Below, in pieces: positions 28,951 through 31,892 of a DNA stretch of 64,000 bases. The notes beneath the pieces were generated by a model that made no database searches, was not told the origin of the DNA, and saw nothing but the letters and a program-made list of their open reading frames with translations. The position numbers and the translations under genes were made by a program. This DNA is from Fimbriosthenelais zetlandica (taxonomy: Eukaryota). Numbering within the stretch: position 1 is the stretch's first letter; every line of letters begins with the position of its first letter. The DNA is taken from positions 34,720,001-34,784,000 of the forward strand of contig OZ365115.1 of the NCBI GenBank assembly GCA_977030845.1, written 5' to 3'.

Positions 28951-30185
28951 GAGGAATCACAGATGGGTTAACAAACAATAGTAATCACTGATTGTCACAG
29001 TCAACATAAGGCTGGATGCACACAGCACTGATAACAAACAGACAAATGTACTTGAACTCGAGCCAATGATGTCTGTAACTACTCAATAATCATATCTATA
29101 TCTGGATGGCCATGATAGAGGAAGACCAGATACACAAAGCATCATATAGCCAGAGATGGTTAGCGCAATCAATGGTCCGTCACCCCAACAAGGCCATACA
29201 TCCATAGCCAAAAGTTTACAAGCTTTTGCCGGACGAATTTTGTAACATGATGTTCTATATTGTCTATAAAACCATTGAAAAATCTGCTAAATAATTCTGA
29301 GAAGTGAAGGGGAGTAACTGAAATAAAAGGGATCGAAAAGGGATGATTATTGTAAAGAAAATATGGAAAATTGTTTGAAGTAGGATGTGGAATTTTGGAC
29401 ATGGCTGTAGTAAAGCAAGGTGAATCAATGGAGTGAGTCAATCAGCAAGTTTAGAGCAGGCAATATAAGAGAGGAACTCTTGTTAGCTTACCTCCTCTCC
29501 TCTTATCACACAAACCTTTGTTCTGTCTTTGAACAGCGATAACCACACCAACGCTAAAACATTTTATCCAAGAGATAAAAATAAATGAGGAAAGTTTCCT
29601 GACGATTTATCAATGTAATCAGTTATATCTGAAACTTGTCGGCGGAGTTGTTGTAAATTTCAACTCGTGAGTTGAATGTTGTTTGTCCACTTTGCCAATA
29701 TCCTAATTTACTGCGAAATGACTTCCTGTTTTTATTTTGTCATGGAGATACGTGTTTTGCTTTCCCATATATTTGTTTCTATGGTTTGCCTGCCTCTGAT
29801 GACATGCAGGATTTTGGATTTATCACGAAAATTGAGAGATTGGCATAGCAATATATATATTAATGAGGCATTGAATCTCGCTTGATTTTCTTCTTCTTTT
29901 GGGGGGCTTGAATTTTTATTATCACCACAAGTTTATATTTTTGTTTTATTGTCACTCCTTGTATTTGACCTTGTATTTGTCCTATCTTGACCTTGATCAC
30001 TAACCACCAACCATCTGCTCCGTAACAACCAGCATCTGGCTCCTGTCCCATCCACCAATCAGAATCAAGGACACATAATTGGTTTATCGTTCTCTATTCC
30101 TATTGTTTTGAATTAGTGCTTGCTGATAGAGTCCTTTAGAGTTACACCTTAATATCTATTCATTATACTCATTCATAAATATATC

Positions 30186-30211
30186 GTATTTTTCTTTCAT
30201 TGCAGGTAAGT
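30186..30211 (+). other. Candidate recursive splice site (zero-length exon, AG|GT)
   Basis: GTATTTTTCTTTCATTGCAG|GTAAGT: a strong polypyrimidine tract and CAG are immediately followed by a perfect 5' splice-site hexamer, on the same strand as the PRDM3/16 exon. Confidence 0.6.
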
Positions 30212-31892
30212 CCTGTCTCATCCTTTCCCATTTTCCTTAGAGAAAAGGAAAACTACAAGGTAACGCTTGACATTGTCAAAGTTTGCTCTCTGAACAACTA
30301 GTAATCATATAAGAATGACCAACATACGTAAGTGTTTGTCCCTCCTCTCTCCTTGACGACGCGTCGTGACCACGGCGTTGATTATGTGTACCCACGTCGC
30401 ATGTCCGGCGTACATGTCGTCCCTACACCCCTCACGCTCCCTACACAGCTTCAAAGCTCAAATCTCGTTTAGCGGCGAGACTTGGTCCTCATCATCTCGC
30501 GCCTCATTCGTCACGACTGATGGTGCTTCAATCAAATCGCTTGTTGCTCCCTTTAAACTCGGCGTCTATTACGGTGTTTTAAAATGAAAACTTTACTGGC
30601 CTCAGGCGGGGTGGGCTTGTTTGGCGGTGTTGTATGGGGGTTGGGGGTTTAGGGGTATTCGGGTACAGAACAAAATGAGCGTCTCTACTCTATTGTGGGG
30701 TGCGGATTGAGGCAGAAGTACACAAACATTACGCCCGCTTTGGCGGCGCTCTGTTGCAGATTGCATTTCAAGATTTGTCTTTAACTTTGTCTACTTAAAA
30801 AAGTGGGAAACTTAGTTACACAATGTCTTTTCCTTGGAGCAGATTGAAATTGAGATTTGTCTTCTCTTTTTGCACATAAGAAAGTGAAAAACTTTTCCCG
30901 GGCTGGTTTAGTTGGATTTTATAAAGGGATTATAAGTCCATCTGTGTTTGACCACTTATATGTATCATTATAGTCAGGAAAATAATATAGGCCTATACTC
31001 ATGAGTTTGGACTGCAATAATATGAATCCGACTAGAGTACTCATTTGATTCTCTAATTGCTAGAGTAATCCTTTGCCACTCAAAGTTCATTTTGATGTTG
31101 AAGTTGTAAGTTTTAGTTAATCTATTTTTGGTGTTGGAAATGAACTTTTGTGTACCGAAATTGCCTTGGTGTTATTTTGATGTGAAAGCACCATATAGGA
31201 GTGGGTAAAAGTGAGGCCTCAGACATCAGACATCACCTTACTATATACAAGTACAGATATTCAGCCTCATGAAAAGTTGCATTGTGACGCCAGAGGGCGG
31301 TGGGCTCAATTTAACCACGCCATCTACGGCGAGTAGGGGAACTATAGCTATGTCACATGACGCACGTTCACCGCTCGGACGTACGCACGGCTGCGCACGC
31401 ATACTGACCATCCGTGAACCTGATGGTGGGGGGGGGGTGGGGGGCGGGGGGTGATAGATGGTATTCTGTATGTTTAAATAGCTGTACTCACATCAAACGA
31501 GGAACGCCTGAGGACAGACGTATAAAAGGTCATTGTGGTGAGATGGGCTGAGAAGGCTGGTGGAGATGGGCGTGGGTCGGGGGTTGGGGGCTGGTCTATA
31601 CCATATATATTATTGTAGAGGGTTTTATATAGGCTATTATTTTAAAGAGACTGATTTCTTTTTATAAATGTTATCATAGAACAGTTCTCTGAGATATCGT
31701 GAGGTTGCTGACAGTACATTTAGCGAACAATTACTCATTCATATATTTTGACATTTCCCCTGAATTGTCCAAACATTTCCTGTACTTTTTTAGTCACATT
31801 AAGGAGAGTTAACTTCCATCATTATTGAGAGGAATTAGGGGTGGTCAATTATGATTAATGTACTGTAGCCTACTCTAGATGAACTGATGTAT

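What the first reader, a model, noticed from the sequence alone, without database searches (positions are those of the whole stretch)
30160..30215. Ratchet-point signature suggesting recursive splicing of a giant PRDM3/16 intron
Seen: TACTCAT (branch-like)...GTATTTTTCTTTCATTGCAG|GTAAGT, a near-ideal 3' splice site fused to an ideal 5' splice site with no exon between. It is on the gene's strand and about 33 kb upstream of the PR exon. A rough estimate gives about 0.25 CAGGTAAGT per strand in 64 kb before requiring the pyrimidine tract. Established: this is the motif of recursive splice sites in long introns of Drosophila developmental genes and some vertebrate neural genes. Inference: stepwise intron removal in a lineage where, to my knowledge, it is little documented; with the 17.7-kb site it could form a series of stepping stones.
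Basis: partly seen in the sequence, partly recalled or inferred. Interest (0 to 1): 0.8.

Follow-up and report, generated by a model that had tools for sequence, protein, structure and literature searches.

The report
Predicted recursive splice site, PRDM3/16 intron
Midway through a 78-kb intron of an invertebrate PRDM3/16 gene, an intron end is fused directly to an intron start and followed by a short hidden exon, which is the known signature of stepwise (recursive) intron removal; genome-wide counts make chance unlikely, but no RNA data could be examined.

Summary
A pyrimidine tract ending in CAG abuts GTAAGT at window 30205|30206 on the + strand.

- **Location.** The site lies inside a 77,922-nt intron that splits the PR/SET domain of a single-copy PRDM3/16 gene. 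It is 44.7 kb from the upstream exon, which ends GAG|GTAAGT, and 33.2 kb from the PR exon at 63416-63550.
- **Chance.** The 9-mer alone is not significant (0.44 expected in the window). With its pyrimidine tract it is expected about 0.01-0.03 times per 64-kb strand.
- **Genome-wide test.** The class Y5-N-TT-N-CAG|GTAAGT occurs 83 times in the 447-Mb genome, against 21 and 12 for two controls, and clusters on one strand.
  - 14 of the 83, this site included, carry an AG|GTRA donor 40-61 nt downstream.
  - Only 2 do so at a control distance, and none upstream.
  - This is the cryptic "RS-exon" architecture shown experimentally in flies and vertebrates. Here the hidden exon is 54 nt and its donor is weaker than the regenerated one.
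- **Not tested.** No sequencing run was listed, so junction, lariat and sawtooth tests were impossible. Conservation could not be tested either.

Verdict: a probable (about 0.6) recursive splice site, a new member of a known kind. The scan has noted similar ratchet sites 24 times elsewhere in this genome.

The parts
1..63415 (+). The part of the 77,922-nt intron between the two PR-domain exons that lies in the window. The intron runs C25:34705494-34783415 and its first 14.5 kb lie before the window.
   Evidence: The upstream exon was found by homology at C25:34705207-34705493 and ends GAG|GTAAGT. The downstream exon starts at 63416. Long ORFs near the site have no Pfam domain.
30166..30176 (+). 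Branch-point-like motifs: TACTCAT, then TTCAT. The candidate branch A residues are at 30171 and 30175, 34 and 30 nt before the acceptor.
   Evidence: Read directly. This is weak evidence: a YTNAY motif in this position is found at 44% of random places.
30186..30205 (+). Recursive 3' splice site: a pyrimidine tract (13 of 16 Y) with TT at -6/-5, then GCAG. There is no other AG for 62 nt upstream.
   Evidence: TT at -5/-6 is found in 196 of 197 fly ratchet points (10.1101/006163).
30206..30211 (+). Ratchet-point 5' splice site GTAAGT. Joined to the upstream exon it regenerates GAG|GTAAGT, the same nine bases as the intron's own donor.
30206..30259 (+). Predicted cryptic RS-exon, 54 nt. In the gene's frame it is 18 codons with no stop. 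It is predicted to be skipped.
   Evidence: Its length falls in the 40-61 nt range of the 14 genome-wide sites with the same architecture.
30257..30265 (+). RS-exon donor AAG|GTAACG. It matches 7 of 9 consensus positions, so it is weaker than the ratchet donor (9 of 9 on the same score).
   Evidence: A donor this good within +30..+100 occurs at 14% of random places. The genome-wide enrichment of such donors after ratchet motifs is shown.
63416..63550 (+). Second PR/SET-domain exon: 45 codons, phase 0 at both ends. It would be the acceptor exon of the final splicing step.
   Evidence: It matches Pfam PF21549 positions 51-94 and is 66% identical to Lingula PRDM16.

Best explanation
The site is a recursive splice site (ratchet point) of the fly type, with a cryptic RS-exon. 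It would divide the 77.9-kb PR-domain intron of a PRDM3/16 orthologue into steps of 44.7 kb and 33.2 kb.

**Inferred mechanism**
1. During transcription, the exon ending ...TGGGAG (C25:34705493) is spliced to the acceptor at window 30205. Recognition is helped by exon definition across the 54-nt cryptic exon (30206-30259) and its donor at 30260.
2. The join recreates GAG|GTAAGT. This donor is stronger than AAG|GTAACG, so it wins.
3. The cryptic exon and the remaining 33.2 kb are removed together when this donor is spliced to the PR exon at 63416. Nothing is left in the mRNA.

**Shown here:** the motif, its place and strand in the intron, the regenerated donor, the downstream donor, and the genome-wide statistics of this architecture.

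**Inferred:** that splicing actually uses the site.
For: - **Motif and position.** Searches confirm the motif. The site is single-copy in the genome.
- **Gene model.** ATG at C25:34661285; PR exon 1 at 34705207-34705493, ending GAG|GTAAGT; PR exon 2 at window 63416-63550; later exons as far as 34828410. So the site is 57% of the way along the gene's largest intron, on the sense strand.
- **Local chance rate.** About 0.01-0.03 per 64-kb strand.
- **Genome-wide count.** Y5-N-TT-N-CAG|GTAAGT occurs 83 times. The same pattern read backwards occurs 21 times. The two modules in swapped order occur 12 times. A Markov-type expectation is about 38.
- **Strand clustering.** Pairs of sites within 50 kb are all on the same strand: 3 same and 0 opposite without contig C35 (0.31 expected of each), and 12 to 0 with it.
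- **Downstream donor.** 14 of the 83 sites, this one included, have AG|GTRA giving a 40-61 nt exon. Only 2 of 83 do at a control gap 100 nt further on, and 0 of 83 upstream. Fisher's test gives p = 6e-6. The spacers are unrelated in sequence, so this is not a repeat family.
- **Published parallels.** TT at -5/-6 as in 196 of 197 fly ratchet points (10.1101/006163). A cryptic RS-exon of about 50 nt with donor competition (PMC8605326). Sense-strand enrichment of such sites in >50-kb introns of sea urchin (8.2x), beetle, bee and fly, but not of vertebrates (PMC2773006).
Against: - No RNA evidence of any kind: no sequencing run was listed, so there are no junction reads, lariats or sawtooth coverage.
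- Conservation is untested. The only relative found aligns in the exon alone.
- The core 9-mer by itself is at chance level.
- The pyrimidine tract is interrupted (13 of 16) and fails the stricter pattern of 8 consecutive Y.
- There is only one such site in a 78-kb intron. The segments of 45 and 33 kb are longer than the fly average of about 18 kb.
- The cryptic exon is in frame with no stop, whereas fly cryptic RS-exons are mostly out of frame (PMC8605326).
- The controls for the genome-wide enrichment are imperfect. Ordinary exon donors preceded by pyrimidine-rich exon ends, and duplicated DNA such as contig C35, contribute to the 83.
- 10 kb of the intron (C25:34710001-34720000) could not be read.
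Confidence: 0.62

Rival explanations
1. Chance juxtaposition: an unused, or only sporadically used, cryptic AG|GT in a long AT-rich intron, with no selected function.
For: CAGGTAAGT alone is expected 0.44 times per window, and 38 of 100 shuffles hold one. The genome should hold some 12-38 chance sites of this motif class. The scan read hundreds of windows of this genome. The branch-like motif (44%) and the long AG-free zone (14% given a pyrimidine tract) are not discriminating. There is no RNA or conservation evidence.
Against: With the downstream donor, the full architecture is expected fewer than about once in the whole genome by chance: 12-38 chance sites times about 1-2.4%. Fourteen are observed, this one among them. 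It also sits on the sense strand, mid-way along the gene's largest intron, and the upstream exon regenerates a perfect donor.
Confidence: 0.22
2. An expressed alternative cassette exon (30206-30259, 54 nt) rather than a silent ratchet. Its inclusion would insert 18 residues into the PR/SET domain between ...SAWE and LVDSYGK...
For: The 54 nt are a multiple of three and open in the gene's frame, between two phase-0 exons. It is flanked by an acceptor and a usable donor. Expressed RS-exons exist in flies, for example the Ubx microexons (PMC8605326).
Against: An open frame over 18 codons is expected 42% of the time. No homologue (Lingula, Ptychodera, Branchiostoma, Batillaria) has an insertion at this junction. 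The exon's own donor (7 of 9) is weaker than the regenerated ratchet donor, which predicts skipping (PMC8605326). An insertion here would fall inside the conserved SET fold.
Confidence: 0.1
3. The GTAAGT is the donor of an unannotated alternative first or non-coding exon that ends at 30205, driven by an internal promoter and spliced to the PR exon.
For: CAG|GTAAGT is also the ideal ordinary donor. Vertebrate MECOM has several alternative first exons (my own knowledge).
Against: All three frames upstream of 30205 are closed within 10-30 codons, and none has an ATG-initiated frame running into the junction. This reading explains neither the pyrimidine tract with TT at -5/-6 nor the genome-wide enrichment of a donor 40-61 nt downstream. 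No promoter evidence was found.
Confidence: 0.04

Closest known systems
Drosophila intronic ratchet points with cryptic RS-exons (Ubx, kuz, Bx, luna; Burnette 2005, Duff 2015, Joseph 2018/2021)
   Same: A pyrimidine tract with TT at -5/-6, then CAG|GTAAGT. It lies in the sense strand of a very long intron of a developmental regulator. The spliced exon regenerates a strong donor. A short cryptic exon (here 54 nt, about 50 nt in flies) ends in a weaker donor. Genome-wide, such sites cluster on one strand.
   Different: The animal is not an insect; its closest named homologue is brachiopod. There is one site per 78 kb rather than steps of about 18 kb. The cryptic exon is in frame. There is no RNA or conservation evidence here, whereas fly sites are validated by junction reads, lariats, RT-PCR and mutants.
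Vertebrate recursive splicing through RS-exons in long neural genes (Sibley 2015; Blazquez 2018; later lariat-based surveys such as PMC10156609)
   Same: An AG|GT site deep in a long intron, defined as an exon through a downstream donor. Competition between the regenerated donor and the RS-exon donor decides whether the exon is skipped.
   Different: Vertebrate long introns show no sense-strand enrichment of such sites (PMC2773006), and many vertebrate sites lack a strong motif. The motif class here is enriched 2- to 7-fold over controls. PMC10156609 does not mention MECOM or PRDM16 in its main text.
Computationally predicted RP-sites in long introns of sea urchin, honey bee, beetle and mosquito (Shepard et al. 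2009, PMC2773006)
   Same: Prediction from sequence alone in non-model invertebrates. Enrichment over a strand or order control is taken as evidence of selection.
   Different: That study used annotated introns, a sense-versus-antisense comparison and a looser score. Here there was no annotation, so enrichment was judged against reversed and swapped patterns, strand clustering and the position-specific downstream donor.

Membership tests
Recursive splice site / ratchet point | A 3' splice site (pyrimidine tract, YAG) directly abutting a 5' splice site (GTRAGT), with no exon between. | tested here: met
   A tract with 13 of 16 Y, then GCAG|GTAAGT at 30186-30211.
Recursive splice site / ratchet point | TT at positions -5 and -6 of the acceptor (196 of 197 fly ratchet points, 10.1101/006163). 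| tested here: met
   T at 30200 and 30201.
Recursive splice site / ratchet point | Lies on the sense strand inside a long intron of a transcribed gene. | tested here: met
   The intron runs C25:34705494-34783415 (77,922 nt), between homology-defined PR exons on the + strand. The start codon is 89 kb upstream of the site. That the gene is transcribed is assumed, not shown.
Recursive splice site / ratchet point | Joining the upstream exon regenerates a functional 5' splice site. | tested here: met
   The upstream exon ends ...GGGAG, so the join gives GAG|GTAAGT, identical to the intron's own donor.
Recursive splice site / ratchet point | A cryptic RS-exon of about 50 nt whose downstream donor is weaker than the ratchet donor (PMC8605326). 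| tested here: met
   AAG|GTAACG at 30260, giving a 54-nt exon. This site is one of 14 of 83 genome-wide with this feature, against 2 and 0 in the controls.
Recursive splice site / ratchet point | Exon-to-ratchet junction reads, lariats from the ratchet donor, and sawtooth coverage in total or nascent RNA. | not testable with these tools
   No sequencing run was listed for the exon or for the site, so read laying could not be used.
Recursive splice site / ratchet point | An island of sequence conservation at the AG|GT in related species. | tested here: inconclusive
   The only relative fetched (L038) aligns in the PR exon alone, at 74% nt identity, and reaches only 10 kb upstream. A search with an intronic ORF found nothing.
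PRDM3/16 (MECOM/PRDM16/hamlet) gene as host | An N-terminal PR/SET domain followed by two C2H2 zinc-finger clusters, and orthology to PRDM3/16. | tested here: met
   The PR exons match PF21549. The best named homologues are Lingula PRDM16, Ptychodera MECOM-like, and Branchiostoma and Batillaria proteins. Exons along C25:34661285-34828410 align to Lingula PRDM16 over residues 43-868. Only one locus in the genome matches the N-terminal region strongly.

The most novel reading that the evidence does not exclude
Fly-type recursive splicing with cryptic RS-exons is an ancestral bilaterian way of handling giant introns, retained in this (probably lophotrochozoan) lineage. In this gene the ratchet sits in the intron that corresponds to the MDS1/EVI1 boundary. 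Competition between the ratchet donor and the donor of the in-frame 54-nt exon could then act as a regulated switch on the PR/SET domain, giving an intact or an interrupted domain, rather than a silent processing step.
Probability: 0.1. Interest if true: 0.7.

Novelty: new member of a known kind. Interest (0 to 1): 0.45.

Why it matters
Recursive splicing has been shown experimentally only in flies and vertebrates. Whether the fly-style motif with a hidden exon is lineage-specific or ancestral is open.

This site, together with the genome-wide pattern found while checking it, gives a short and concrete list for testing that with one total-RNA library or a few RT-PCRs. The pattern is 83 motif sites, clustered by strand, of which 14 carry a donor 40-61 nt downstream. 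The animal is neither a fly nor a vertebrate.

For the gene itself, the site lies in the intron that separates the two halves of the PR domain. That is the junction where vertebrate MECOM switches between PR-containing and PR-less forms.

As a single site it is not surprising. The scan had already noted ratchet sites in many other giant introns of this genome.

Tried and rejected
- **RNA evidence.** The look-up of sequencing runs on the PR exon (rna) and on the site (any) listed no run. Read laying was therefore unusable.
- **More genome sequence.** I hold only alternate 10-kb pieces, and 10 kb of the intron is unread. Flanks of the other 82 motif sites could not be fetched, so they were studied only through pattern searches.
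- **Conservation.**
  - The Lingula PRDM16 locus is not on record.
  - An ENA contig from a relative (L038) shares only the exon and has no ratchet-like site within 10 kb upstream.
  - A protein-space search with the intronic ORF 28227-28553 found nothing.
- **Repeat or transposon origin.** Rejected: window 29900-30500 is single-copy, and there are no local repeats of note.
- **U1 snRNA pseudogene on the minus strand** (ACTTACCTG is the 5' end of U1). Rejected: the match stops after about 10 nt and there is no Rfam hit.
- **Coding exon, or a nested gene that owns the site.** Rejected: frames are closed on both sides and the ORFs have no Pfam domain.
- **The strict pattern of 8 consecutive Y.** It gave 168 hits, but about 60% belong to one repeat family (CTTTCCTCACAGGTAAGT). 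Our site does not match this pattern, so it was replaced by a TT-anchored pattern.
- **The 17.7-kb 'second stepping stone'.** Rejected: it reads CAG-CCA-GTAAGT, which would leave 3 nt in the mRNA, and homologues show no extra residue there.
- **Literature.** No paper in the library links recursive splicing with PRDM16, MECOM or hamlet, or with molluscs or lophotrochozoans, apart from incidental mentions.

Full report
**Observation**

At window 30186-30211 (+) a 20-nt tract ending in CAG is followed directly by GTAAGT. The junction is 30205|30206.
- CAGGTAAGT occurs once in the 64-kb window. Shuffles give 0.44 on both strands, and 38 of 100 hold at least one.
- The tract has 13 of 16 pyrimidines, a level reached by 4.5% of local 16-mers.
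- Combined with a local CAGGTAAGT rate of 0.2-0.6 per 64-kb strand, this gives about 0.01-0.03 expected per 64-kb strand.
- It is the only YAG|GTRAG junction with a pyrimidine tract on either strand of the window.
- The branch-like TACTCAT (30166-30172) and the 62-nt AG-free zone are real but hardly discriminating. They occur at 44% of random places and at 14% of pyrimidine-rich YAGs respectively.

**Where the site lies**

The window is C25:34720001-34784000 of a 447-Mb genome.
- The exon at 63416-63550 encodes 45 residues of a PR/SET domain. Its best relatives are PRDM3/16 proteins: Lingula anatina PRDM16, Ptychodera MECOM-like, and Branchiostoma and Batillaria proteins.
- Searching the whole genome with these proteins located the preceding PR exon at C25:34705207-34705493. 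That is 14.5 kb before the window, and it ends ...TGGGAG|GTAAGT.
- The start codon (MRSKPKARRLAN...) is at C25:34661285.
- Later exons lie at about 34794709 and 34800955, with a large zinc-finger exon at 34826341-34828410.
- The intron that holds the site is therefore 77,922 nt, the largest seen in the gene. The site is 44.7 kb (57%) from its 5' end and 33.2 kb from its 3' end, on the sense strand.
- Only one locus matches the PRDM3/16 N-terminus strongly, and Lingula is the closest named relative. The animal is thus an invertebrate, probably a lophotrochozoan. Its identity is not given.

**What surrounds the site**
- The 600 bases around it are single-copy and hold no meaningful repeats.
- They hold no known RNA family, apart from a sub-threshold snoRNA-like hit 360 nt upstream.
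- They hold no coding potential: frames are closed on both sides and ORFs have no Pfam domain.
- Downstream, AAG|GTAACG at 30260 defines a 54-nt interval (30206-30259). In the gene's frame this interval is open.
- A donor of that quality within +30..+100 is found at 14% of random places. On its own it is only mildly supportive.

**Genome-wide test, without annotation**

RNA data were unavailable, so I asked whether this kind of site behaves non-randomly in the genome.
- A first, strict pattern (8 consecutive Y) was dominated by a repeat family and did not include our site.
- The TT-anchored pattern Y5-N-TT-N-CAG|GTAAGT excludes that repeat and includes our site. It occurs 83 times. The same pattern read backwards occurs 21 times. 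The two modules in swapped order occur 12 times. A Markov-type expectation from local frequencies is about 38.
- Pairs of sites within 50 kb are all on the same strand. Excluding contig C35 there are 3 same-strand and 0 opposite-strand pairs, with 0.31 expected of each (p = 0.004). Including C35 the count is 12 to 0.
- Most telling, 14 of the 83 sites have an AG|GTRA donor that would close an exon of 40-61 nt. Only 2 of 83 have one at a gap 100 nt further away, and 0 of 83 have one at the mirror position upstream. Fisher's test gives p = 6e-6.
- The 14 spacers are unrelated in sequence, so this is not a repeat.
- Both members of a same-strand pair 24 kb apart on C19 are among the 14, and so is the site under study.
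- By chance, fewer than about one site in the whole genome should show the full architecture.

**Comparison with what is known**
- Fly ratchet points have TT at -5/-6 in 196 of 197 cases, a prominent pyrimidine tract, and lie in long introns. Segments average about 18 kb and reach up to 64 kb (10.1101/006163).
- They require a cryptic RS-exon of about 50 nt. Its donor loses to the stronger regenerated ratchet donor, so the exon never appears in mRNA (PMC8605326).
- The present site meets each of these sequence criteria. The regenerated GAG|GTAAGT (all nine bases identical to the intron's own donor) should beat AAG|GTAACG (7 of 9 consensus positions).
- Sense-strand enrichment of such sites in introns over 50 kb was reported for sea urchin (8.2x), beetle, bee, mosquito and fly, but not for vertebrates (PMC2773006). 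The idea that non-insect invertebrates use them is therefore not new.
- I found no paper linking recursive splicing to PRDM16, MECOM or hamlet, or to molluscs or lophotrochozoans.
- Notes from this scan list 24 other ratchet findings in giant introns of the same genome, none with RNA proof. I treated them as leads. The enrichment and clustering tests above are my own partial check of them.

**Mechanism proposed (inferred)**
1. The upstream PR exon is spliced to 30205, with the 54-nt interval and its donor providing exon definition.
2. The recreated GAG|GTAAGT is then spliced to the PR exon at 63416. This removes the cryptic exon and the last 33.2 kb.

**Weaknesses**
- There is no RNA evidence.
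- There is no conservation test. The one relative found aligns only in the exon.
- There is a single site, in a tract weaker than many of its class.
- The cryptic exon is in frame.
- The null models are imperfect.
- 10 kb of the intron is unread.

**Verdict**

| Reading | Probability |
|---|---|
| Functional recursive splice site | about 0.62 |
| Pure chance | about 0.22 |
| Expressed 54-nt cassette exon | about 0.10 |
| Donor of an alternative first exon | about 0.04 |

It is a new member of a known kind. Interest is moderate, mainly because the genome-wide architecture makes recursive splicing outside flies and vertebrates directly testable.

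Noticed in passing
genome-wide (G000), e.g. C1:1147891-1147908, C11:1242751-1991523: A dispersed repeat family of about 100 or more copies carries CTTTCCTCACAGGTAAGT, a ratchet-like motif. It makes up about 60% of hits to the strict pattern and would inflate any naive count of recursive splice sites in this genome.
   Followed up: partly
G000:C35:108289-317214 (minus strand): Eight ratchet-motif sites lie on one strand within 209 kb, spaced 12-45 kb apart, and use only four different 18-mers. 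This is either a giant intron, or a series of introns, with many ratchet points, or a tandem segmental duplication.
   Followed up: no
G000:C19:20827253 and 20851566 (-); C21:25412742 and 25436310 (+); C37:10522021 and 10558268 (-): Three same-strand pairs of perfect ratchet motifs lie 24-36 kb apart. Both C19 sites also have a donor that closes a 41-nt cryptic exon. They are good candidates for recursive splicing elsewhere in the genome.
   Followed up: partly
window 17746-17765 (+): TTTTCAG-CCA-GTAAGT: an acceptor and a strong donor separated by 3 nt. If used, it would add one proline codon between the PR exons, and homologues show no such residue. Probably chance.
   Followed up: partly
window 29791-29846 (+): A weak SNORD58-like C/D-box match (21 bits against a gathering score of 42; E = 0.74), with a TGATGA box but no clear D box. 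It lies on the sense strand 360 nt upstream of the ratchet acceptor. Probably chance.
   Followed up: partly
window 30335-30480 (+): A CpG-rich patch (several CG dinucleotides and ACGCGT) starts about 75 nt after the cryptic exon's donor, in otherwise AT-rich intron. It has no Pfam or Rfam match. Its meaning is unknown.
   Followed up: no
window 20001-22000: The most GC-rich 2 kb of the window (53% GC), with overlapping ORFs of 149-206 aa on both strands and no Pfam domain. It could be a CpG island, an enhancer or a decayed element inside the intron.
   Followed up: partly
window 32990-33270: An assembly gap or masked stretch. The window holds 576 N in all, some of them 2.8 kb downstream of the site. 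It was left as it is.
   Followed up: no
L019:1285-1321 (C25:34661285-34661321): Exon 1 of the gene: ATG plus 12 codons (MRSKPKARRLAN) and one base, with donor ACG|GTGAGT. It is in phase with the next exon. Intron 1 is 43,885 nt. No ratchet-like site was seen in the three 10-kb pieces of it that I hold.
   Followed up: partly
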